A DNA stretch of 63,235 nt, filler included, from Octopus bimaculoides (Eukaryota): assembly GCF_001194135.2 (NCBI RefSeq). It is 9 parts of 8 records of this genome, joined end to end, with 100 filler letters (N's around TTAATTAATTAA, not from the genome) between each part and the next. Parts side by side here need not be neighbours in the genome. Positions count along the whole stretch, not along the records: positions 33,937 to 41,073 come from NW_026346321.1; 8 more parts are not named here. The stretch is one strand, 5' to 3'. Below the pieces are notes generated by a model. The model searched no databases, was not told the origin of the DNA, and worked only from the letters and a program-made list of their open reading frames with translations. The position numbers and the translations under genes are program-made. Below are positions 2,757 to 41,173 of this stretch, one piece after another; position 1 is the stretch's first letter, and each line of letters starts with the position of its first letter.

Positions 2757-3178
2757 GAAAAATGTATTAAATACTACAAAATGTACACGTAGGCCAGACA
2801 CCAGAACCCTAATACTTCATCAGTTATTGACCGAAAAATATTAACACTTAGTTTCATGCTTNNNNNNNNNNNNNNNNNNNNNNNNNNNNNNNNNNNNNNN
2901 NNNNNNNNNNNNNNNNNNNNNNNNNNNNNNNNNNNNNNNNNNNNNNNNNNNNNNNNNNNNNNNNNNNNNNNNNNNNNNNNNNNNNNNNNNNNNNNNNNNN
3001 NNNNNNNNNNNNNNNNNNNNNNNNNNNNNNNNNNNNNNNNNNNNNNNNNNNNNNNNNNNNNNNNNNNNNNNNNNNNNNNNNNNNNNNNNNNNNNNNNNNN
3101 NNNNNNNNNNNNNNNNNNNNNNNNNNNNNNNNNNNNNNNNNNNNNNNNNNNNNNNNNNNNNNNNNNNNNNNNNNNNNN

Positions 3179-3204
<26 letters not shown>

Positions 3205-3216
<12 letters not shown>

Positions 3217-3410
3217 CATACACATTCGCCATGATAAATCGCTAGCCACTACACATTTTTTTTCTCTCCTTGTTTCATTCTGAGTTCCTTTGTGGAAGAG
3301 CGTAGGCTCGAAACGTTAAAGACTTTTTCACTTCCCGAGCGTTATACTAATACGTCTGTTTGTTGTCTACACTACTTGTCTTCATCTTTTGTTTTTTTTG
3401 TGAATTCTCG
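3205..3410 (+). mobile_element. Penelope-like terminal repeat fragment
   Basis: gaagagcgtaggctcgaaacgttaaagac motif; a related copy lies on - at 49950-50105. Confidence 0.45.
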
Positions 3411-5964
3411 CACGCACAATATTACATTCAGATGGTGGGAAATCACTTAGCGAAGGTGTCGTATAGTAGAATTGAACCCTAGGACCACGTAGTTGTAAAA
3501 TAGACGAGACTTCAACCCCAAACACGCCCCCAAAATTAATTTAATCGAATGTTTGATTCTCGTAGGGGACAACCTATTTCAAATGCAGCTAACTTATAAG
3601 GGACAGCATAAAAGAAAAAAAGGAATATACTTCTGTACTCACCTGCCATTTTCTACGAGAAACAAATTTTTTCAATCGCTTTTTTGACAGAGTTCTATCG
3701 TGAGAAGCTGTCTCTGAGGTAGATCGCTAGAACAAAAAGAAAAAGGAAATGGAAGAATTATAGATTGTCCGATATCTTGGTAGCTAGGCGTTCGTGAGAT
3801 AGATACATTATCTGTAACAATGGATAGGAAGTATATCTGTCTAAAATATATATTAATNNNNNNNNNNNNNNNNNNNNNNNNNNNNNNNNNNNNNNNNNNN
3901 NTTAATTAATTAANNNNNNNNNNNNNNNNNNNNNNNNNNNNNNNNNNNNNNNNNNNNTACTTGGAAGCAATGCGTGGCGTTCGATCATATAATAACATAA
4001 ATAATATATAATTATATGCATATATCCATACATATATATATACATACCGACATCTATATGTATACATACATGCATATATGGGTACAGGACATCACAAAAA
4101 ACGTTAACCACAATGAGAAACAAAAACGTAAAGACGAGGACAGAAAACGAACTTTTTTTCGAACAAGATTCTTAATGTGAAATCGTTTGTTGAATCAGAT
4201 ATTGCTATATTTGGGGACGGTCATTTTGCCAATAAACACATGAACTGTTTATTTGATCTTCACTTTAGCTTTATTGTTGTTATTAGTTTATTTGTCAGAG
4301 TTCTTTCGTCACACATTCTGTGACTTCTTCAATGATTCTGTTCGTCGTATCCCCACTTCTCTCTGATTTTGTTCGATCTATTGCACCTTGTCTTTCTGAG
4401 ATTTGAGGAAGATTTGGTTGCTATTTCACCAACTGCTTACAGCCTTTATATTTGACTCGAGTAACATTTGTTGTTGTTGTTGTTGTTTGACCCTGTGTCA
4501 ATCCTAATGGAATTGGTCTCTGGTTAAAAGCATGCTGCTTGTCTCAAACTCGCTAATGTTAATGGTATTTTAACTGTTGGTTGGCATCACTCTACCTAAT
4601 ATCAGGAAGAATGCTGCCAGCAAGGCAGATGTTTGATAAAAGACATCAATTATATGGAATTCTATAGGAAGGAAATTAAACTCGAGAACGAGTTTCATAA
4701 TATCTACCGTTTCTGCAGATGTTTCCAAAGATTTCAACCCAAATACAACGGTGGTAAGAAAGTTTGGTAAATATTCCACCTAAGCTAGATATTACGATGG
4801 AATTGGAAGGAAATTTCTCAAAACTGGTTCGGAGTCTATATAGAGTGAGTTGAAATGCATTAATTGACCTCGAGTTGGACTCTGCTTAACCAAAGACATC
4901 AAAGTGAAACGGGGAACATAATAGGGAATCACCACTCTGCGATTGTAGAATGGTGCAAACCATGAGACATCCAATTGATGGGTTGGCCATTCTTGGATTC
5001 ATCCAATTATTTGAAAAATTTGAGGAATAACACAAAAGATCTAGAAAACTGTGCAAAAAAAAAAAATAACGGAAATATTTGATAGAGGTACAGACATAGC
5101 CACATGGTTGAGAAGCTGCAATAGGGTAGCTTTTCTATGTAGTCTTTCGATCTGCTTGAAGTAGCAGCCAAATTTCGGTGTTCCTAATGAAAATTAATTT
5201 AACTAATTGCGCCCCAAAAGTAATTTAGATGTGTAACATATTTTAAGCATCGTAGATTACAATTCTGGCAAACTAAATGGGGAATGTGTATCATATACGA
5301 TGAAGAAACCTGAAAAATATGTCCTGCGAATCGCAGAGCAGGGAAAGGTTTAAATCTGATGTTGTTGATCCCGGATTGCAAGGGATTTACGTAGCATGAG
5401 GTTAATTGCACGGAAGTGAGCAGAGAATGGTAAGAAGTCGTTTGTGTGTGTATGTGTGTGTGTGTGTGTGTGTGTAACATCATCTGCAGATAAAGCTGTT
5501 TGTATCTTTTGTGGCAATGTGGCAGCGACCTGTTGATAGAAATTGAATTGAGTGGGTGAGAGGAAGACGAGATCTTTGTGACACTCTATTAGACACATTG
5601 CAGCTTCTAGAATGTTCTTCTTGTAAACTGCATTGGTTTGGCGACCTGATGGATAGTTAGATTTCCCTACAGATTCCTCAAAATGGAAAATTTCTGTTCT
5701 GTTTCTCTCTTTCTTTCATAAAATAATTGCAAAACGACATATTTCATTCTTCGGATCTATTTTTAATAATTTAATTTCCAGTAAAGCTTCTCTCGTTTCC
5801 AAAGAATAAATAAATGGTGGCGAATGGTGAAATGAGTTTATATTACGCAGAAAATTCTAGCGCGGAAAAGAAGTGAAATCTTTCATTTCAAATGAAAATG
5901 GTTATGATTGTGACTTCCTCGAAGAAGGCAGCAATAAGAATTCAAGGCAGAGAGAGGGAGAGAA

Positions 5965-33936: not shown

Positions 33937-34028
33937 CTCCGGCTGCGAGGACTCCAAGTGGTCCGGTCTTGACAGCGTTGCCGATGTAAGTCATGTGTTT
34001 TTGCTATGGCATCTAATTCGTTTCTTGG
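33937..34028 (-). pseudogene. Second parvovirus-like VP1u (PLA2) fragment with a 47-bp internal deletion
   Basis: 92 bp identical to 39623-39761 minus 39673-39719; begins at the edge of an assembly gap. Confidence 0.95.
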
Positions 34029-35490
34029 GCCGTTCAGCTTGGACTCAGTCACAACGCATATATCTATCTTTCACGACCTGAGGTCGTCTAGGAGGTATGT
34101 CTGCCTCCATTTGGACCTCAGGCCACGTACATTTATACACCCTATCTTAACTTCCATGAAAAAATATTTACTTTACCTTTGCAGGAGGGGTTTCACGACT
34201 TCCACCGTCCCCTCCTCCGGTATCTTCTATGACTGGTGTAGCCGTTGGTTTTAAAATAATCTTTTCTTTTACTATATGCTGACTCACATCGAAAATATTG
34301 TCAGAATATCTCTGTTTAAATTGTTCGAAGTGTTCTGCACTTATCCTCGCCAACCATATGTGCGGCGGTTTACCTTCAATAGGTCCCATTACCGTATAGT
34401 TTTTTTGTTATTAATCCATGTAACACTTCATTTTTGATGGTGTACGACACAATTCTTTCTTGCGGGGGTTTAGGAGCGGGTTTCAATTTGAGAGTGGACG
34501 AGGGTATTATTTTTTGTGTGTTTTGCATTTTTTCTTTTTTTTCTTGTAGGGGGAGGGGAGTCTGGTCCAATAGGTTTTTTCCTTTTATTTTTAACAACTT
34601 TAAACTCCGCTTCTTCCTCACTTTTTCCTTTTTCTATTATGACTTCCGGCATTTTCGATTTACCTTGTTTGACATCTTTTTTAGGTTCTGTTTTCTCCGG
34701 TATTTCTTTCTCCCTTTGGGGAGGGACTTCTTTTTTTTTGGTTAGGTTTTTTTATTTTCACACATTTGGAACGCACGTGGCCCTTTTCACCACATTTAAA
34801 ACATCTGGGCCTCCGTCCCTCCACCGACACCCTTGCACTGAGACCCTCCCCTATAAAAATCCTGTCTGGTCTGGTCTAGAGGGTATCGTTTGACGCTAGA
34901 ACTACAAGCTCAAGCGCCTGCCCCTTCCAATTGAGTGCGTTCCTTCTTCTCATTGTAAGTACATCCACCTGATCCTCCACGTCGTAAATTAACGCTTGTA
35001 CTAACCAGTTTACGTCATACCCGGATGGAATATCTTCTATTGTGATTTTCGCAGTTCTCCGGCCAAGGTATGTAGGTAAGAGCATTACCTCTTCAGTTTT
35101 CATCGTTTGTGTCGATACTTCTTTCGCTACTTCAGCCGATTCGAATTGGGCCTCTACTGTAGCATTTCGAGGCCCTCTACCAACATATTTTATTTTTTCC
35201 CACACAGGGGCAAGACACTTTTCTATTGCATCCATTTTCATCATCATGACGCGCCTTTCCTTGCAGTTGTATACTTTGTAAATAACGGTTCTTACCGCCA
35301 ATTCTTGGATAGTTTCCTTTGGCGGTATTAACCTTGTTACATCGTCAGTTTTCTTTATCAGGTGTCTATATTTGTACCACTGTTCGGGTATCACTTCCAT
35401 TACTTCAAATTGCCCGCCTACGGCGGATGAAAAGCTACTGACCTTTCTCGTTTCCTCGGTTACTTCGGGGTTTACTTGAAATACATGCAT
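34029..35490 (-). mobile_element. Tx1/L1-type LINE: ORF1 (zinc knuckle) plus the first ~43 codons of ORF2 (APE endonuclease)
   Basis: Reading through the stop at 34876-78 gives ...RVSVEGRRPRCFKCGEKGHVRSKC (CCHC at 34762-34803); frameshifts in poly-A runs; ORF2 ATG at 34157 gives MEVKIGCINVRGLRSKWRQTYLLDDLRS*KID, the APE N-terminal NVRGL motif. Confidence 0.85.
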
Positions 35491-35494
35491 ATTA

Positions 35495-35766
35495 TCTATA
35501 TATATAAAAATGAGAATGTCTGTCTGTCTGTCTGTCTGTGTGAATCCCTAAAACTCGAGAACTACGCAACCAATTTCATTCAAATTTTACACATGCCTTA
35601 CTTAGGGTTCCAGTTGCGTTTTAGTCAAAAAAAATTTTAACTTCTTCCAGAGTTCGAGCCCACAGCAACATATCTCCTCCACTATTTAAGTATTACGTGT
35701 CAAAAGTGAAACAAAAACACTCATGTCAAATACTTTCACTTTAAAAATGAAACTATCCTGCTAACT
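35495..35766 (+). mobile_element. Helitron-type 5' terminus
   Basis: A|TCTATATATATAAAAATGAGAAT(GTCT)n...aaaactcgagaactacgcaaccaatttcattcaaattttac: A|TC start, (GTCT)n tract and subterminal motif typical of non-autonomous Helitrons; runs into an N gap at 35767. Confidence 0.7.
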
Positions 35767-36151
35767 NNNNNNNNNNNNNNNNNNNNNNNNNNNNNNNNNN
35801 NNNNNNNNNNNNNGAGAGAGAGATGTATACATATAGATGTATATGTACACGTTATTCCACTGAAACAATCACATTTCGATACTTTCAGAGAGAGAGAAAG
35901 AGATGTATATGTACACGTATATGCATAGATATAGATCTATATGCATACATGTATATGTATACACATGTGTAGATGTATATATATATAGATGTACATGTAA
36001 TATGTACATATATATACATGCATACAGATATCTATACATATATACACCCATCACACACAAACACATGCACACAAACCCACACATTAGTCATTTGTTTTCT
36101 TATCCAAAACTACGTCAAAAGTACTGAACGGATCTTTATGAAATTTGGAAA

Positions 36152-37669
36152 TTATATTCTATGTATAACGGCCATAACTCCCATGTATAATGTAGATGTT
36201 TTTGGTGGATTTTCAGAAACGAATGTTTTGTTGTATGTGTTTGTGACGTATTTTTTTATGAAATCTTTCCATATAGTTATCCACATCAGTGGGTTCAATT
36301 CCACTCTTCCCCATTCTTTAAGTTGGGGCATAGGCGCTCTTGTTTCGAACAAGTATAGCCTGTTTTTCAGGGCGTCCTCGTCTTGCATTACTACTCTCCA
36401 TGGCGGTGTGTTACTTGTTGATATTGATGGTGTTCTTTTGAGAATACGTTCGTTTTGGTGCTTAATGTTAATATAAGTTTGAGTTCCTTCTAAAATGCAC
36501 TTAGCTTCCTCAATGTTGTTGGTGGTGAACCACATCTCGTCGGTATAGATAAGAGTTTTGTCTATACATGATCCGAATGTGAAATTGTCACTGGCTTGAC
36601 ATCGCATTCTTCCGCAGTTCATTAAACCGTTGCGAATTGATCTAAGAATGTAGCTTTTTCCGGAGTTGCTGACGCCTGTGATGTGTAATCCGTTAACTTT
36701 TGGATTAATTTTATGGCAAATGTCAAACGTTTGTTGTCCGAATGATTGTGGGTCGATGTTATGGTGTTTTAACCATTCTTCGTATATGTTTAATGATGTC
36801 TGTATATCATGGTAATTGTTCATATTATTCATGAAAAGTGTTTTCTTGTCGTTAATTTGCTGCCATATGGGTGTGCTGAGAGTTTCGATATTTGTTTCAG
36901 TAGCTGCTGCTGATATTATCGTTTGAATGTTAGCCGTGTTCCTGTAAATGTTGGACCATGTTGTTCTGTGAGACAGTTTAGGGGAGTTATTACAGTAGTG
37001 TATTATATCTCCTAGGTCTGTGCTGTTACACTGCCTCATCATCTTTTTGATAAAGTTATATTTATCGCCTCTGACTGTTTTGGTTCTGTTAATAGATTCT
37101 GCTTCGGATATGTCGTCATCAGTATTATCGTAGTTTTTATCCGTTAGCTTTTGAAGTAAAGCTGTTTGTTGTTCTGAGTTTATGTTGTTAGCACATACTA
37201 CCCATCTCAATGAATCGTCTTGTGTTAAATATTTGCAAAATCCATATGGTGTAAATACTTTCATGGCTGCCATGTCGTATGGTTTGGCGATGTTATTCCT
37301 CAATATATTTTTAAGCATTTGAAAGCTGTGTTGATTAGACGGATGTTCCTTATGAAAAGATATGACGTGAAAGTGTTTCTTGTCGTGACAGTGTTTAATT
37401 GTACTCATAGCCTCTTTATGGTAGACGACAATAGATGGATGTTTTGAAATAATATTCATAAAGTACTGTGCCTGTGGTGACTGCGTGTATTTGATGGTCT
37501 CCATGGCTTTTCGTATTGTGGGAGATTCATCCCATGTAAATTCATTGTCGTCATTCCACCTATATACCCAAGTATATGGTAGGAGGCTCGATTCTTTGAT
37601 GAAGTTGTCGAACGATTGTTTGCTAGCGTACACGTCTGCCGATGTTGAAGGCTCCATCGCTGGCTGCAT
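36152..37669 (-). CDS. NS1: Parvovirus-like NS1 replication initiator (HUH endonuclease + SF3 helicase), 505 aa from ATG 37669 (alternative ATG 37657)
   Basis: HUH KHFHVISF (HFH at 37367-37375), motif III FCKYLTQ, Walker A GVSNSGKS (36653-36676), Walker B LIYTDE, B' EAKCILEG...INIKHQ, motif C ISTSN; no internal stops. Confidence 0.95.
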   Translation of the reverse strand: MQPAMEPSTSADVYASKQSFDNFIKESSLLPYTWVYRWNDDNEFTWDESPTIRKAMETIKYTQSPQAQYFMNIISKHPSIVVYHKEAMSTIKHCHDKKHFHVISFHKEHPSNQHSFQMLKNILRNNIAKPYDMAAMKVFTPYGFCKYLTQDDSLRWVVCANNINSEQQTALLQKLTDKNYDNTDDDISEAESINRTKTVRGDKYNFIKKMMRQCNSTDLGDIIHYCNNSPKLSHRTTWSNIYRNTANIQTIISAAATETNIETLSTPIWQQINDKKTLFMNNMNNYHDIQTSLNIYEEWLKHHNIDPQSFGQQTFDICHKINPKVNGLHITGVSNSGKSYILRSIRNGLMNCGRMRCQASDNFTFGSCIDKTLIYTDEMWFTTNNIEEAKCILEGTQTYINIKHQNERILKRTPSISTSNTPPWRVVMQDEDALKNRLYLFETRAPMPQLKEWGRVELNPLMWITIWKDFIKKYVTNTYNKTFVSENPPKTSTLYMGVMAVIHRI

Positions 37670-37723
37670 TGTGTCGTTGGTTGTCGAATTGTTTCTATTT
37701 ATCGTGTTATTTCCCGCCCAGCG

Positions 37724-37730
37724 ATTTATA
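37724..37730 (-). promoter_or_regulatory. Candidate TATA box for NS1
   Basis: TATAAAT on - strand, 17 nt after the VP stop codon and about 55 nt before the first NS1 ATG. Confidence 0.45.
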
Positions 37731-37746
37731 ATCACTGTCGCTTGTT

Positions 37747-39872
37747 TTAACGGTTCACAAAGTGTCCTGACAGATGTTTCAGAACTTTATTTCCGCTTGC
37801 GTCCTTATCTATAAATGTTGTTCTACCATGCCGTTTCCCTTTCGGCGGTATGTAATTCAAGTGCCTACCAGGGGGCGTGGCTAAAAACAGGTCGTAGTTG
37901 AAGTCTTTGTAGGTGGACTGTTGTGCTACTTGTGTGCATATTGTTGATACTTTCTGTGGGTGGTGCATAGCCTCGAAGTAGCATTCAATTTCTAGGAAAT
38001 ACGTCACATCGAAAGTGAAGTATAGCTGAGCTGCTGTTCCATTGGGTCTAGATGCTGCTGGTACGTTTATGTAAACAAGTTGAGGCGGGTCTTCGGAAGT
38101 GTATAGTACTTTGTTAATGAGCGTTCTATTGGCTGTAACCATGCTGCCGCTGCTGATTCCTCTTGTTCCGTCCTCTTTTTGAATTGGTTGTTGGTGGTCG
38201 TAGTTTATGTCAGAAATTTCTGTGTAGTTTAGGTCTTCTTTTTTGTGTGGTCTCTTTCGTTTTCTAGTTTCACCGAAGCTTTCGTGGTTTTCTTTGCCTT
38301 CTACTCCAAGTTCAGGTGCTGTGGTGACGTCAAGACATCCATCCCATGTGTAGTTGAATCCGAGTTGTGTTTCATCGTTGACAGAGCTCCCGTAGTTTAA
38401 GATGCAGCCATGCCTTGTGTATGTGTCGTTAAGGCTTGTATTCGTTAGTGGTACTCGAAGTTGTGATGGGTTATCCCATTTGTGGCTGTAAACATCTCCT
38501 TGTCTTACTTTTTGGACGTTCGGCATTTCTCTCCAGTCGTGGAATCTAATGATTTTTGATGTGCATGACTGTGTGTCTGCGCTGATTCCGCATTCGCTTA
38601 ATTGATTGACGTAAGCTGTCGGTGCGCAATATGCGAATTTGTATTTCGGTAGTTCCATATTCATGAACTGTTCTGGTTGTATCAATGAGAATCCCATGTT
38701 CGGAACTTTGGTAATTGTTTTCAGGTTGCCGTGTCCTACGTATGTGCCGTTGTCAACCCATATTTCGAAGTAAGGCAGGGGGCTTGGTAGGAATACCTCC
38801 TCGTTATTTCTTGATGTCCATTCGCCACCTATGACGTCAGAGATTTCGAAACCAACAGATTTAATGCGATATGATGTTGCGGTTTTGATTGTCTGTTCAA
38901 ACTGAATGGGATTGACCCATGATGTTAGCCAGTATGGTATGATGTAGTCTTCTGCATTTACAATGCCGTACGCGCTGTGTCCGACATCATGGTAACCTTT
39001 TTCACTGCCTTGAAATTTAGTGAAGTTTACTGTTGCTTGATTCATTTGAGTTGTTTTAACTCCATGTCTGAATCGTCGTTTGAAGCACACATCTCCACTG
39101 AAATTGCCGGTTGCCTCTGGGATCGTTGCTCCTCTGACTTGGTTTCCTGCCCAGCCTGTTGCTGCGCCTGCTGCGCCCTCGTTGCTTGTAGATGCTTCAG
39201 CCATTTTCTTAAGATCGACAACGTACTGAGAATGAGTAACGCTATCACTATTCCCGCTGTTGCCTCTGAATTTTTGATCAAGTCCACAATAATGTTTAAG
39301 ACTAATTGCTCCGGCTGCGAGGACTCCAAGTGGTCCGGTCTTGACAGCGTTGCCGATGAATTGCTTGTCTGATTCCCAGGTGTCCTTNNNNNNNNNNAGC
39401 ACACATCTCCGCTGAAATTGCCGGTTGCCTCTGGGATCGTTGCTCCTCTGACTTGGTTTCCTGCCCAGCCTGTTGCTGCGCCTGCTGCGCCCTCGTTGCT
39501 TGTAGATGCTTCAGCCATTTTCTTAAGATCGACAACGTACTGAGAATGAGTAACGCTATCACTATTCCCGCTGTTGCCTCTGAATTTTTGATCAAGTCCA
39601 CAATAATGTTTAAGACTAATTGCTCCGGCTGCGAGGACTCCAAGTGGTCCGGTCTTGACAGCGTTGCCGATGAATTGCTTGTCTGATTCCCAGGTGTCCT
39701 TCGTAGGATCCTCGTAATGTAAGTCATGTGTTTTTGCTATGGCATCTAATTCGTTTCTTGGTACTTGGTAGCGTCTTTTTTCTAGGTCTGTTCCTGGTCC
39801 TAAGAAATCGTGGCCTGGGACGTGCAGTTCTGATGTTTTTTTCTCTTTAGGACGTTTCTTTGGTGGCGGCAT
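37747..39872 (-). CDS. VP1: Parvovirus-like capsid protein VP1 with PLA2 domain; 603 aa after collapsing a 304-bp assembly overlap; probable VP2 start at Met119 (485 aa)
   Basis: N-terminal NLS MPPPKKRPKEKK, Ca-loop HDFLGPG, catalytic DAIAKTHDLHY, Gly/Ala-rich MAEASTSNEGAAGAATG, jelly-roll-like IIPYW...F....SYRIKSVGFEI; 2126-314=1812 nt keeps the frame. Confidence 0.92.
39042..39727 (-). CDS. Overlapping +1-frame accessory ORF, 123 aa after collapse, one predicted transmembrane segment
   Basis: ATG at 39727 is 145 nt into VP1; hydrophobic ATAGIVIALLILSTLSIL followed by RKWLK and a Q-rich polar tail. Confidence 0.55.
39084..39701. repeat. 304-bp direct duplication across a 10-N gap (probable unmerged contig overlap)
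   Basis: 39084-39387 equals 39398-39701 except one A/G difference (ctccactg vs ctccgctg). Confidence 0.9.
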
Positions 39873-39879
39873 AACACGG

Positions 39880-39930
39880 ACTGATTTAAAGTTGTTTTCT
39901 GTGTATTTATATGCAGGTAGTCATGTGACA
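39880..39930 (-). promoter_or_regulatory. Core promoter of VP: TATA + Inr + E-box
   Basis: On - strand: gtcacatgac (E-box-like), TATAAATA (39911-39904), TCAGT initiator (39884-39880) with its A 29 nt from the TATA start, and ATG at 39872. Confidence 0.7.
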
Positions 39931-40251
39931 TATTTCGTCATCTGTGTTACTTTTCATACACACCAGCGCTGGCAGGACGTATAAATTAGACGGGGCACCT
40001 CTTTCTCCAGCGGCATCGCTGTCTCTGAGGAGTTCTGACTCCTCCTTCCTAGTCAATTAAATTAAATTTTTGATGTTGATGAAATTTTAACCCGAACATA
40101 ACAGATGAGCATTATTTGTAATTCAACGGTACAACAGTGTAAGACTACCCTTTCAGATATACTTTCATTGTGATTTCTGCAATGTGGTGCATAAATTGTC
40201 AAGTAAATGAGACGCATCTTTGCCTCCACTGATTCACTTGCAAAGTGTTAA

Positions 40252-40524
40252 GTAAAATTATTTTGTTGCAGACCTCCTTTGGGTCTTTTTATTATCACTA
40301 CGACACACATAGTCCCCAGTTGGTAACATTGATTTCAAGTCCCTCCTAGATGAGAGACTGGCATTCCACTTAATGTCTATGTTCCATGCTGGCATGGATT
40401 GGAGAGTTATTAATGTAGAAATATGGTATCGTAGCTACTAACAGTTGAGGGTTGCGTAGTCTAGACGGCGTTTTTAGATTTCATTATTCTCTTTAACCCG
40501 GGCAAAGCCGGGTATTTCTGCTAG
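40252..40524 (+). mobile_element. Helitron-type 3' terminus
   Basis: Hairpin acccgg-gcaaag-ccgggt (40496-40513), 7-nt spacer, CTAG (40521-40524), then T. Confidence 0.8.
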
Positions 40525-41173
40525 TCAAAAATAATTTCTTCTTGTAAAAGAGGGAAGTCCTCGTCACACAATAAAAATGCCATTTCGTTATCCATATTGA
40601 AATAAAATTTTTCTTTCACACAATAGTAGTTTGCTATCTCTCTAAAAGAGAGCAGCAAAAGAGAAAATTTTTGCCCCGCAGGGCGCAAATCGACAGGAAC
40701 AACAGTTGAAATTCGACAAAAATCACATTAAACAGCAACAAAAATCACATTAAACAGCAACAAAAAGGACAGAAACAACTCATTAAATTAGGTAGAAGCA
40801 ATCCGAAGTAGCACGACGAGACTGAAGTAGCTTGACCAGCTGGTTGAAGAAGTCTGTCTAGCCCTGGCAAACATATATAATCAGAGTGAAATTTATTCAC
40901 TGGTTACCAAAATATGAAATATCATATTTCTGAATCTCTCAGAGAGAGTTAAGCAGAAGCGAAGACACTCTTGAATTGTGCACTGAGCACTTCACTTATC
41001 CCTGTGGGATCTGCAGTCAGTGAGCCATAGCAGTCTCTTTTGCAAATCTATAGAAAGCCTTGGGGTTTGTTTTNNNNNNNNNNNNNNNNNNNNNNNNNNN
41101 NNNNNNNNNNNNNNNNNTTAATTAATTAANNNNNNNNNNNNNNNNNNNNNNNNNNNNNNNNNNNNNNNNNNNN

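What the first reader, a model, noticed from the sequence alone, without database searches (positions are those of the whole stretch)
35495..40524. Whole parvovirus-like genome enclosed by Helitron termini: captured virus or capsid-encoding rolling-circle transposon
Seen: an A|TC 5' end at 35495 and a hairpin+CTAG|T 3' end at 40524, in the same orientation, with the complete NS1+VP cassette antisense between them and a further Helitron-like subterminal motif abutting the NS1 stop. Known: Helitrons capture DNA by end bypass, and both Helitron Rep and NS1 are HUH nickases. Inference: either a non-autonomous Helitron carrying a virus (a route to EVE amplification), a virus that integrated into a Helitron, or a composite unit mobilised by rolling-circle transposition. 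A 47-N gap and a microsatellite separate the 5' end from NS1, so the two ends may belong to different copies.
Basis: partly seen in the sequence, partly recalled or inferred. Interest (0 to 1): 0.85.

Follow-up and report, generated by a model that had tools for sequence, protein, structure and literature searches.

The report
Parvovirus-like insert inside an octopus Helitron
A nearly coding-complete copy of an unclassified parvovirus-like virus sits backwards inside a real rolling-circle transposon (Helitron), itself inserted in a LINE of a cephalopod-like genome; it most likely integrated there and was not carried around.

Summary
Bases 35495-40524 are one 5.03-kb insertion in a LINE. In an Octopus bimaculoides paralogue of that LINE, the two flanks are contiguous.

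Both ends are matching termini of one canonical Helitron type:
- The 5' TCTATATATATAAA+(GTCT)n end recurs in 8 metagenomic contigs.
- The 3' hairpin CCCGGGCRAAGCCGGG, 12-13 nt, then CTAG|T recurs in 115 metagenomic contigs.
- Both ends occur together on 1.1-kb elements, on a 7-kb RepHel-encoding element, and on a 1.24-kb O. bimaculoides element.

Between the ends, antisense, lie open VP (PLA2 domain) and NS1 (Parvo_NS1) ORFs. It is not a whole genome: there are no terminal hairpins, and NS1 lacks the C-terminal tail seen in all compared relatives. Relatives share the unusual VP-then-NS1 order and none has Helitron ends.

The 10-N gap is an unmerged 304-nt overlap in the same reading frame. The 47-N gap cannot be closed, but the LINE flanks tie both sides to one insertion.

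Best reading (0.55): the virus integrated by illegitimate recombination into a resident ~1.1-kb non-autonomous Helitron. A second viral fragment is joined to the same LINE 2.1 kb away. Capture or mobilisation (about 0.2) cannot be excluded without the source genome.

The parts
33937..34028 (-). Second fragment of the same VP gene (VP'), running off the left edge of the piece. It is 5'-truncated, has one internal frame-shifting deletion, and is otherwise identical to the main copy. It is joined directly to the interior of the LINE.
   Evidence: families D3, D4; the LINE paralogue continues where the window switches to VP sequence.
34029..35494 (-). Host LINE, ORF1 side: ORF1 with a CCHC knuckle and the start of the endonuclease region. 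It is a decayed copy, with ORF1 cut short relative to the paralogue, and is broken off at 34029 by VP'.
   Evidence: 75% nt identity over 1,469 nt to L005 15722-17173. ORF1 best hits are O. bimaculoides proteins at 49-50%. Pfam on the paralogue: zf-CCHC, Exo_endo_phos, zf-RVT.
35495..35766 (+). Helitron 5' terminal region: TC start, TCTATATATATAAA, a (TGTC)5.8 microsatellite, then the body up to the 47-N gap.
   Evidence: 88% over 41-42 nt to L103 and L040. The same terminus occurs in 8 metagenomic contigs, 6 of them preceded by A. It aligns to the 5' end of the O. bimaculoides element. TRF result.
35767..35813 (.). Assembly gap (47 N). Continuity could not be tested directly.
   Evidence: Indirect support for continuity.
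35814..36151 (+). Non-viral interior, presumed Helitron body: (GA)n, a degenerate (ATGTAT)n / AT-rich microsatellite, a CA-rich stretch, then 67 nt of unassigned sequence abutting the NS1 stop codon.
   Evidence: No significant similarity to Helitron ends. A GA-rich microsatellite lies at the equivalent place in the O. bimaculoides element.
36152..37669 (-). NS1 gene: HUH-type motifs and an SF3 helicase with a Walker A motif. It is open, with no internal stops or frameshifts. One break: the 3' end is cut at the virus/host junction, so the C-terminal basic tail of the relatives is missing.
   Evidence: Pfam Parvo_NS1 1.6e-17. AAV Rep40/68 helicase 2e-09. Alignment with five relatives..
37670..37746 (-). 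VP-NS1 spacer with a TATA-like box. This is NS1's own promoter region. The 527-aa ORF starting at a GTG reads through it.
   Evidence: Equivalent spacers of 37-158 nt occur in relatives.
37747..39872 (-). VP gene: N-terminal PLA2-like domain, a Gly-rich stretch and a beta-rich body. There are no stops or frameshifts. It contains the 10-N gap, which is flanked by a 304-nt unmerged overlap.
   Evidence: Pfam Phospholip_A2_4 8.9e-09. 41-43% identity over 100% of the length to four 606-621-aa proteins that sit next to NS1 genes..
39873..40048 (-). Viral non-coding region upstream of VP: a TATA-like box and a motif shared with relatives. Homology to relatives fades at about 40026-40045. The upstream motif conserved in relatives is absent, so the left end is truncated.
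40027..40053 (+). Inner hairpin (7-bp stem) + CTTC + CTAG|T, on the same strand as the outer Helitron and at the virus/non-virus junction. It is either a second terminator-like site or a coincidence.
   Evidence: It is not similar to the family 3' end. The sequence from 40053 onward is not significantly like family 5' ends.
40053..40418 (+). Unassigned non-viral interior, presumed Helitron body. It has no unusual folding and so is not a parvoviral telomere.
   Evidence: z -0.33.
40419..40524 (+). Helitron 3' terminal region: hairpin ACCCGG/CCGGGT at 40496-40513, then 11 nt ending in CTAG at 40521-40524, followed by T.
   Evidence: 115 metagenomic contigs carry the same hairpin, and similarity among copies ends at CTAG|T, with a hairpin-to-end distance of 12-13 nt. 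It aligns to the 3' end of the O. bimaculoides element.
40525..40959 (-). Host LINE, 5' UTR side. It is contiguous with 35494 in the paralogue. The first ~10 nt (40525-40534) are absent from the paralogue and may belong to the insertion.
   Evidence: L005 15393-15707 matches window 40851-40535 (67%) and L005 9655-9781 matches 40959-40834 (78%). Junction alignment.

Best explanation
This is an endogenous viral element nested in a transposon nested in a retrotransposon.

Step 1 (shown): a non-autonomous canonical Helitron landed between an A and a T, just upstream of the ORF1 start codon of a LINE copy in a cephalopod-like genome. It has a TC start and ends in a hairpin plus CTAG. It encodes no transposase, so it must have been moved in trans by a RepHel transposase through rolling-circle transposition.

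Step 2 (inferred): DNA of an unclassified parvovirus-like virus was later joined into the interior of that resident ~1.1-kb Helitron by illegitimate (end-joining type) recombination. The virus's native gene order is VP then NS1. The inserted DNA had already lost both genome ends, and it lies antisense to the Helitron.

Step 3 (inferred): in the same event, or at least at the same locus, a second fragment of the same virus was joined to the endonuclease region of the same LINE, 2.1 kb away.

Result: a young-looking EVE with two open ORFs and their own TATA-like promoter regions, enclosed by intact Helitron ends. Nothing shows that the composite has moved since. NS1 plays no part in the Helitron's mobility.
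For: One insertion in a LINE:
- The paralogous site in O. bimaculoides has the two flanks adjacent.
- There are no TSDs, TIRs or LTRs.

Matching Helitron ends:
- The 5' terminus occurs in 8 contigs.
- The 3' hairpin+CTAG|T occurs in 115 contigs, and similarity among copies stops at CTAG|T.
- Both ends occur on the same 1,119-1,159-nt elements, on a 7-kb element with a 1,644-aa RepHel, and on a 1,243-nt element in O. bimaculoides flanked by A|...|T.

Integration into a resident element rather than capture:
- Non-viral DNA inside the ends is 657 + 472 = 1,129 nt, the size of complete non-autonomous members.
- The outer 3' end is the family's own end.
- NS1 loses its tail at the junction, and the VP-side non-coding end lacks the motif conserved in relatives.
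- VP' is joined to the LINE interior with no Helitron sequence.

Virus identity:
-.
- VP-then-NS1 order is native.
- Relatives lack Helitron ends.
Against: - Only one locus is visible. The source genome is not in any searchable collection, so copy number and other flanks are unknown.
- A hairpin+CTAG|T sits exactly at the virus/non-virus junction on the Helitron strand. A capture that ended at a new terminator would predict this.
- The interior non-viral segments (35591-36151, 40053-40418) could not be shown to be Helitron body.
- The scaffold is built from three contigs. The VP overlap has one mismatch, so more than one viral copy may be collapsed. VP' is only 92 nt at a scaffold edge.
- Helitrons are reported as recently active in Octopus vulgaris (PMC13282606), so mobilisation is plausible.
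Confidence: 0.55

Rival explanations
1. Captured and mobilised composite. A non-autonomous Helitron acquired the VP-NS1 cassette elsewhere. This could have happened by read-through past its own terminator, by recombination between two Helitron copies, or by viral integration into a copy at another locus. The 5-kb composite was then transposed in trans by RepHel into this LINE. A sub-variant has two units in tandem: 35495-40052, ending at the inner hairpin+CTAG, inserted at the A|T formed by the flank and a 472-nt Helitron at 40053-40524.
For: - The matching ends are intact and the block is a clean insertion.
- There is an inner terminator-like site at the viral junction, followed by TC. Only 0.13 such sites are expected per piece, and two were found on the same strand.
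- Helitrons are known to capture host DNA (established knowledge; PMC11417382).
- 178 recently active Helitron insertions are reported in O. vulgaris.
Against: - No second copy is known.
- The outer 3' end is the family's own end.
- The non-viral length equals that of one ordinary element.
- The sequence from 40053 onward is not significantly like family 5' ends.
- A second viral fragment lies 2.1 kb away in the same LINE, with a non-Helitron junction. That would be an unlikely coincidence if the composite had arrived from elsewhere.
- No relative of the virus and none of 115 Helitron-end contigs shows the association.
Confidence: 0.22
2. Assembly chimera. Short-read contigs from a multi-copy virus-derived repeat, a multi-copy Helitron and a multi-copy LINE were joined wrongly, or exogenous viral reads were joined to host repeats. 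In that case the enclosure does not exist on one DNA molecule.
For: - There are three contigs in 7.1 kb and two N gaps.
- A 304-nt overlap was left unmerged because of one mismatch.
- VP' at the scaffold edge is otherwise identical to VP.
- Both viral ORFs are fully open, as in an exogenous virus.
Against: - The contig with the Helitron 5' end and the contig with the 3' end carry complementary halves of one LINE, broken at the same point. Independent misjoins would not do this.
- The virus/non-virus junctions at 36152 and about 40050 lie inside contigs, not at gaps.
- The viral ends are truncated, unlike a free genome.
- O. bimaculoides carries a fragment of the same lineage in a gene model, so integration does occur in this host group.
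Confidence: 0.13
3. Chance resemblance. The insertion is only viral DNA plus filler, and its ends look like Helitron termini by accident.
For: A|TC and CTRR|T are short motifs, and structure-based Helitron finders have high false-positive rates (PMC11417382).
Against: - About 40-110 nt at each end are homologous to independent Helitron copies, including a RepHel-encoding one.
- Only 0.13 terminator-like sites are expected per piece.
- The motifs fall at the mapped boundaries of the insertion.
Confidence: 0.02

Closest known systems
Non-autonomous canonical Helitrons (HLE1 / Helitron1), including gene-carrying ones
   Same: TC start, a short G+C hairpin 11-13 nt before a CTAG end, A and T flanks, no TSD or TIR, and no transposase of its own. 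The termini are shared with a RepHel-encoding element. The defining features are taken from PMC11417382.
   Different: The cargo is a near coding-complete virus cassette rather than host gene fragments. Only one copy has been seen, so mobility of this particular composite is not shown.
Parvovirus/densovirus-derived endogenous viral elements in invertebrate genomes (e.g. shrimp IHHNV EVE clusters, PMC9357335; flatworm NS1 EVEs, PMC13055364)
   Same: Parvo-type NS1 and VP sequences joined to host repeats, with truncated ends and no telomeres. There is more than one fragment at one locus.
   Different: Both ORFs are fully open. The gene order is VP then NS1. The host is cephalopod-like. The element sits exactly between matching Helitron ends.
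Parvovirus-like repetitive elements (acorn worm repeat with more than 50 copies; PIVE) proposed as virus-derived transposons (PMC3198968)
   Same: An NS1 ORF and a PLA2-bearing VP ORF inside an animal genome, discussed as possibly mobile.
   Different: Those elements are multi-copy and keep their own terminal hairpin or TIRs. Here the viral termini are gone, the ends belong to a Helitron, and copy number is unknown.
Teratorn (piggyBac-herpesvirus fusion in medaka; PMC10175614)
   Same: A virus genome enclosed by the ends of a DNA transposon.
   Different: Teratorn is a large dsDNA virus fused to an autonomous cut-and-paste transposon and is demonstrably multi-copy. Here a 3.9-kb ssDNA-virus cassette lies in a non-autonomous rolling-circle element, with no evidence of spread.
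Parvoviridae (Densovirinae and the newer invertebrate subfamilies; PMC13426907)
   Same: NS1 with HUH-type motifs and an SF3 helicase. VP has an N-terminal PLA2 domain and a Gly-rich stretch. Related contigs are ~4.1-4.5 kb.
   Different: VP lies upstream of NS1 on the same strand. The VP body has no detectable sequence match to any known capsid. No telomeres were seen in any contig. The nearest relatives are unnamed Logan contigs only.

Membership tests
Canonical Helitron (HLE1) | 5' end starts with TC | tested here: met
   35495-35496. The first ~40-95 nt are homologous to 5' ends of independent elements.
Canonical Helitron (HLE1) | 3' end is a short hairpin followed by a CTRR suffix | tested here: met
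   6-bp stem at 40496-40513 and CTAG at 40521-40524. The same hairpin and spacing occur in 115 contigs.
Canonical Helitron (HLE1) | Insertion between A and T, without target-site duplication | tested here: inconclusive
   The flanks are A and T and there is no TSD. The paralogous empty site proves an insertion. However, the paralogue is only 67-75% identical and lacks ~14 nt at the junction, so the 3' boundary could be 40524 or about 40534.
Canonical Helitron (HLE1) | No terminal inverted repeats (distinguishes it from HLE2 / Helentron) | tested here: met
   No inverted repeat links the two ends.
Canonical Helitron (HLE1) | An autonomous RepHel-encoding partner shares the termini | tested here: inconclusive
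   An element with the same terminus type and a 1,644-aa Helitron_like_N + PIF1 protein exists in soil-metagenome contigs L053/L034. No partner could be sought in the source genome.
Canonical Helitron (HLE1) | Several copies with different flanks in the host genome | not testable with these tools
   The source genome is not in any collection. One family member was found in 20.7 kb of O. bimaculoides.
HLE2 (Helentron / Helitron2) | 12-16-nt terminal inverted repeats, a stem-loop after the right repeat, and insertion between T and T | tested here: not met
   No TIRs. The termini are of the TC ... hairpin-CTAG type.
Gene-capturing (chimeric) Helitron that has transposed with its cargo | The same cargo junctions are present in two or more copies at different loci | not testable with these tools
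   Only this locus is available. No related contig shows the junctions.
Parvoviridae | NS1 with an SF3 helicase domain | tested here: met
   Pfam PF01057 1.6e-17. AAV Rep40/68 2e-09. Walker A is invariant in the alignment.
Parvoviridae | HUH endonuclease motifs in the N-terminal part of NS1 | tested here: inconclusive
   An invariant H-x-H and a downstream invariant Y are present in six sequences. No domain model or structure matched this region.
Parvoviridae | Capsid protein with the parvoviral jelly-roll fold | tested here: inconclusive
   Only the PLA2 domain matches. There is no PDB sequence or profile match. The AlphaFold model has pLDDT 30 and is unusable.
Parvoviridae | Linear genome ending in hairpin telomeres | tested here: not met
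   There are no terminal palindromes or inverted repeats around the cassette. None were found in related contigs either. The window copy is therefore not a whole genome.
Parvoviridae | NS gene upstream of VP (monosense), or the two genes on opposite strands (ambisense) | tested here: not met
   VP lies upstream of NS1 on one strand in the window and in six related contigs.
Endogenous viral element | Viral sequence joined to host DNA within contigs | tested here: met
   The junctions at 36152, about 40050 and 34028/34029 lie inside contigs. The host side is a LINE or Helitron with O. bimaculoides relatives.

The most novel reading that the evidence does not exclude
A non-autonomous Helitron that carries a coding-complete parvovirus-like VP+NS1 cassette and has been, or can be, copied around the genome in trans by RepHel. 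This would be a rolling-circle route to amplifying an endogenous virus. The inner hairpin+CTAG at the viral junction would be the scar of the capture.
Probability: 0.2. Interest if true: 0.8.

Novelty: new variant of a known kind. Interest (0 to 1): 0.5.

Why it matters
- EVEs are usually dead ends. One that sits with open genes between intact ends of a transposon family reported as recently active in octopuses (PMC13282606) could in principle be copied by the host's own transposition machinery. That would be a new way for viral genes to spread and be co-opted.
- Even under the ordinary reading, the locus gives a dated order of events (LINE, then Helitron, then virus).
- It is evidence that cephalopod genomes hold a parvovirus-like lineage. 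I found no paper on this in the library.
- It shows a lineage whose VP-then-NS1 gene order departs from every classical parvovirus layout.
- The locus also yields clean reference termini for an octopus Helitron family.

Tried and rejected
- Two tandem Helitron 5' parts (35495- and ~36031-): no significant similarity between them.
- 40053-40524 as a complete short Helitron of the same family: its start is not significantly like family 5' ends.
- 40053-40420 as a viral telomere: ordinary folding energy.
- HLE2/Helentron reading: no TIRs.
- Looking up the window's own NS1, and O. bimaculoides P0012, in the gene index: neither is on record.
- Viral-contig scans with NS1, an NS1 alignment and the Helitron 3' pattern: nothing found.
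- Phage collection: nothing found.
- Exact 31-nt 3' end in metagenomes: nothing found. The degenerate pattern then gave 115 contigs.
- Inverted or direct terminal repeats in related viral contigs: none.
- VP structure prediction: pLDDT 30, so no fold search was run.
- Composition profile: no sharp boundaries.
- Flanks of the closest NS1 relatives (L001, L126, L127): no shared junctions.
Full report
WHAT IS THERE

The piece (33937-41073) is a small scaffold made of three contigs. On the minus strand it carries two long open reading frames.
- The frame at 36152-37669, counted from its first ATG, matches Pfam Parvo_NS1 (1.6e-17). It also matches the helicase of AAV Rep40/Rep68 (2e-09).
- The frame at 37747-39872 has an N-terminal PLA2-like domain (8.9e-09). 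It is 41-43% identical over its whole length to four 606-621-aa proteins that lie next to NS1 genes in Logan contigs.
- Neither frame has an internal stop.

THE GAPS, TESTED FIRST

The 10-N gap at 39388-39397 is not missing sequence.
- The 304 bases on either side of it are the same sequence with one mismatch, in the same codon phase.
- Counted once, VP is 604 codons, in the range of its relatives.
- The single mismatch means the two contigs could come from two alleles or from two near-identical copies.

The 47-N gap at 35767-35813 cannot be bridged with the tools. The argument from the LINE flanks below ties its two sides to one insertion.

THE BLOCK IS ONE INSERTION IN A LINE

- The 204-aa frame at 34876-35490 has its only relatives in Octopus bimaculoides, at 49-50% identity.
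- The O. bimaculoides locus L005 (CM046605.1) holds a paralogue of the surrounding repeat. Window 35478-34026 matches L005 15722-17173 at 75%, and window 40851-40535 matches L005 15393-15707 at 67%.
- In L005 these two stretches are only 14 nt apart.
- The repeat is a LINE. The paralogue shows a CCHC ORF1, an APE-type endonuclease and a reverse-transcriptase zinc-binding domain.
- So 35495-40524 interrupts one LINE copy just upstream of its ORF1 start codon. No LINE sequence is lost, and the insertion has no target-site duplication, terminal inverted repeats or LTRs.
- The contig left of the 47-N gap and the contig to its right carry complementary halves of the LINE, broken at the same point.
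- The window has about 14 extra nt at the junction relative to the 67-75%-identical paralogue. The 3' boundary is therefore known only to within about 10 nt.

THE ENDS ARE MATCHING HELITRON TERMINI

The 3' end:
- It folds as a 6-bp G+C stem followed by 11 nt ending in CTAG, then T.
- My scan for such sites expects 0.13 per piece.
- A degenerate pattern of the hairpin plus CTAGT found 115 metagenomic contigs.
- These contigs belong to several repeat families. Similarity between copies stops at CTAG|T, and the hairpin-to-end distance is 12-13 nt, as in the window.

The 5' end:
- Eight of those contigs also hold the window's 5' terminus: TCTATATATATAAA followed by a (GTCT)n-, (GTTT)n- or (GT)n-type microsatellite. 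Six of the eight are preceded by A.

Both ends together:
- In L040, L036 and L030 this 5' end and this 3' hairpin delimit 1,119-1,159-nt elements.
- In L053/L034 they delimit a ~6.9-kb element encoding a 1,644-aa protein with Helitron_like_N and PIF1 helicase domains.
- O. bimaculoides L005 itself contains a 1,243-nt element (including a 448-N gap) with A|TCAATATCTATAAAA... at one end and ...CCCGGGCAGCACCGGGTTATACTGCTAG|T at the other. It aligns to the window's first ~95 nt and last ~106 nt.

These are the defining features of canonical Helitrons (HLE1) as summarised in PMC11417382. The Helentron/HLE2 features are absent.

THE VIRUS

- NS1 relatives exist only as unnamed Logan contigs (50-69% identity), plus a fragment inside an O. 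bimaculoides gene model.
- In every contig long enough to tell (L001, L002, L006, L007, L008, L128), VP lies upstream of NS1 on the same strand. The spacer is 37-158 nt and contains a TATA-like box. This order is therefore native to the lineage and not a product of the integration.
- The window's copy is not a whole genome:
  - NS1 has one break, a 3' truncation at the junction that removes the basic C-terminal tail present in all five compared relatives.
  - The non-coding region upstream of VP shares promoter-proximal motifs with relatives but lacks their conserved distal motif.
  - There are no terminal palindromes.
- VP has no breaks.
- A second fragment, VP' (33937-34028), is 5'-truncated and has one internal frame-shifting deletion. 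It is otherwise identical to VP. It is fused directly to the LINE at a point where the paralogue continues into its endonuclease region.
- The VP body could not be tied to any known capsid by sequence or profile, and the predicted model was unusable. 'Capsid' therefore rests on the PLA2 domain, the size and the position of the gene.

WHICH HISTORY?

Four observations favour integration of the virus into a Helitron that was already resident in the LINE:
- The non-viral DNA between the ends totals 1,129 nt. That is the size of complete non-autonomous elements with these termini.
- The outer 3' end is the family's own terminus, not a newly recruited one.
- Both viral ends are arbitrary truncations, as in other EVEs.
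- A second piece of the same virus is joined to the same LINE 2.1 kb away without any Helitron sequence. This is natural for a complex local integration and an odd coincidence if the composite had arrived from elsewhere.

Points against, or at least unexplained:
- A second hairpin+CTAG|T lies on the Helitron strand exactly where homology to viral relatives fades (40027-40053). This is what a capture that ended at a new terminator would leave.
- Its hairpin is unlike the family's, and the sequence that follows is not significantly like family 5' ends.
- The interior non-viral segments could not be shown to be Helitron body.
- Helitrons are reported as recently active in O. vulgaris.

My estimates are: in-situ integration 0.55; capture or mobilisation 0.22; assembly chimera 0.13; chance 0.02. 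The remainder is left for histories I have not thought of.

No relative of the virus carries Helitron ends. None of the 115 Helitron-end contigs carries NS1 or VP. The idea of a lineage of capsid-encoding rolling-circle transposons, or of NS1 acting on Helitron ends, therefore has no support.

COMPARISON AND NOVELTY

- The transposon is a member of the canonical Helitrons.
- The insert is an EVE of a parvovirus-like lineage that fails two family features: gene order, and telomeres in this copy.
- EVEs nested in transposons are known, and parvovirus-like repeats have been proposed as transposons (PMC3198968).
- I found no report of a coding-complete parvovirus-like cassette between matching Helitron ends, nor of cephalopod parvovirus EVEs, in the held library.
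- I rate it a new variant of a known kind, with interest 0.5. It would rise to about 0.8 if a census of the source genome shows the composite at several loci.

Noticed in passing
window 36152-39872; L001, L002, L006, L007, L008, L128: The virus lineage has VP upstream of NS1 on the same strand, with a 37-158-nt spacer that carries a TATA-like box. This is the reverse of the NS-then-VP order of classical monosense parvoviruses. The relatives are 3.8-4.5-kb Logan contigs with both ORFs open.
   Followed up: partly
window 40531-40534; L011-L125; L005 (flank of the element at 3145-4387): Downstream of CTAG|T, the bases A-T-A-A are enriched at +7..+10 (64-70% at each position) in 105 distinct flanks of Helitron ends with this hairpin. 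They follow a variable 5-nt spacer. The window and the O. bimaculoides element have the motif too, and the LINE paralogue lacks the ~10 nt that hold it. It could be a target preference or part of the terminus; this is unexplained.
   Followed up: partly
window 40027-40053: A second hairpin (7-bp stem) + CTAG|TC lies on the Helitron strand, exactly at the virus/non-virus junction. It is unlike the family's 3' end.
   Followed up: partly
L053 and L034 (soil-metagenome contigs, ~7.1 kb): An apparently complete autonomous Helitron with the same 5' TCTATATATATAAAA start and the same 3' hairpin type. It encodes a 1,644-aa Helitron_like_N + PIF1 protein with STPR repeats at its N-terminus.
   Followed up: partly
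L005 3145-4387 (minus strand), O. bimaculoides CM046605.1: A 1,243-nt non-autonomous Helitron (including a 448-N gap) with A|TC...CTAG|T flanks and an internal GA/GAAA microsatellite. It lies 11 kb from the LINE paralogue that served as the empty site.
   Followed up: partly
P0012 (O. bimaculoides UniRef protein, 371 aa): This gene model fuses an ISXO2-like transposase domain with a stretch resembling the VP C-terminus, followed by an NS1 fragment (52% identity over 101 aa). O. bimaculoides therefore also holds a rearranged EVE of this lineage, in the same VP-then-NS1 order.
   Followed up: partly
cluster of P0003: There are 34 sequence variants (at least 90% identical) of a related NS1 spread over dozens of Logan contigs. 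Several contigs end at nearly the same length (4,065-4,078 nt). This suggests either a circulating virus sampled many times or a fixed, expressed EVE.
   Followed up: no
window 35517-35539; 5' ends in L030, L036, L040, L073, L103, L118 and the L005 element: A short microsatellite, (GTCT)n, (GTTT)n or (GT)n, directly follows the conserved 5' terminus in Helitron copies from unrelated sources. It looks like a family hallmark rather than an accident.
   Followed up: no
L001 1-300: The closest relative (69% nt identity, SRR11869386) has one frameshift in the end of its VP gene, and CA-repeat-rich sequence downstream of NS1. It is probably itself an EVE in another host.
   Followed up: no
window 40716-40759: A perfect 22-nt tandem duplication lies in the LINE 5' UTR.
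   Followed up: no
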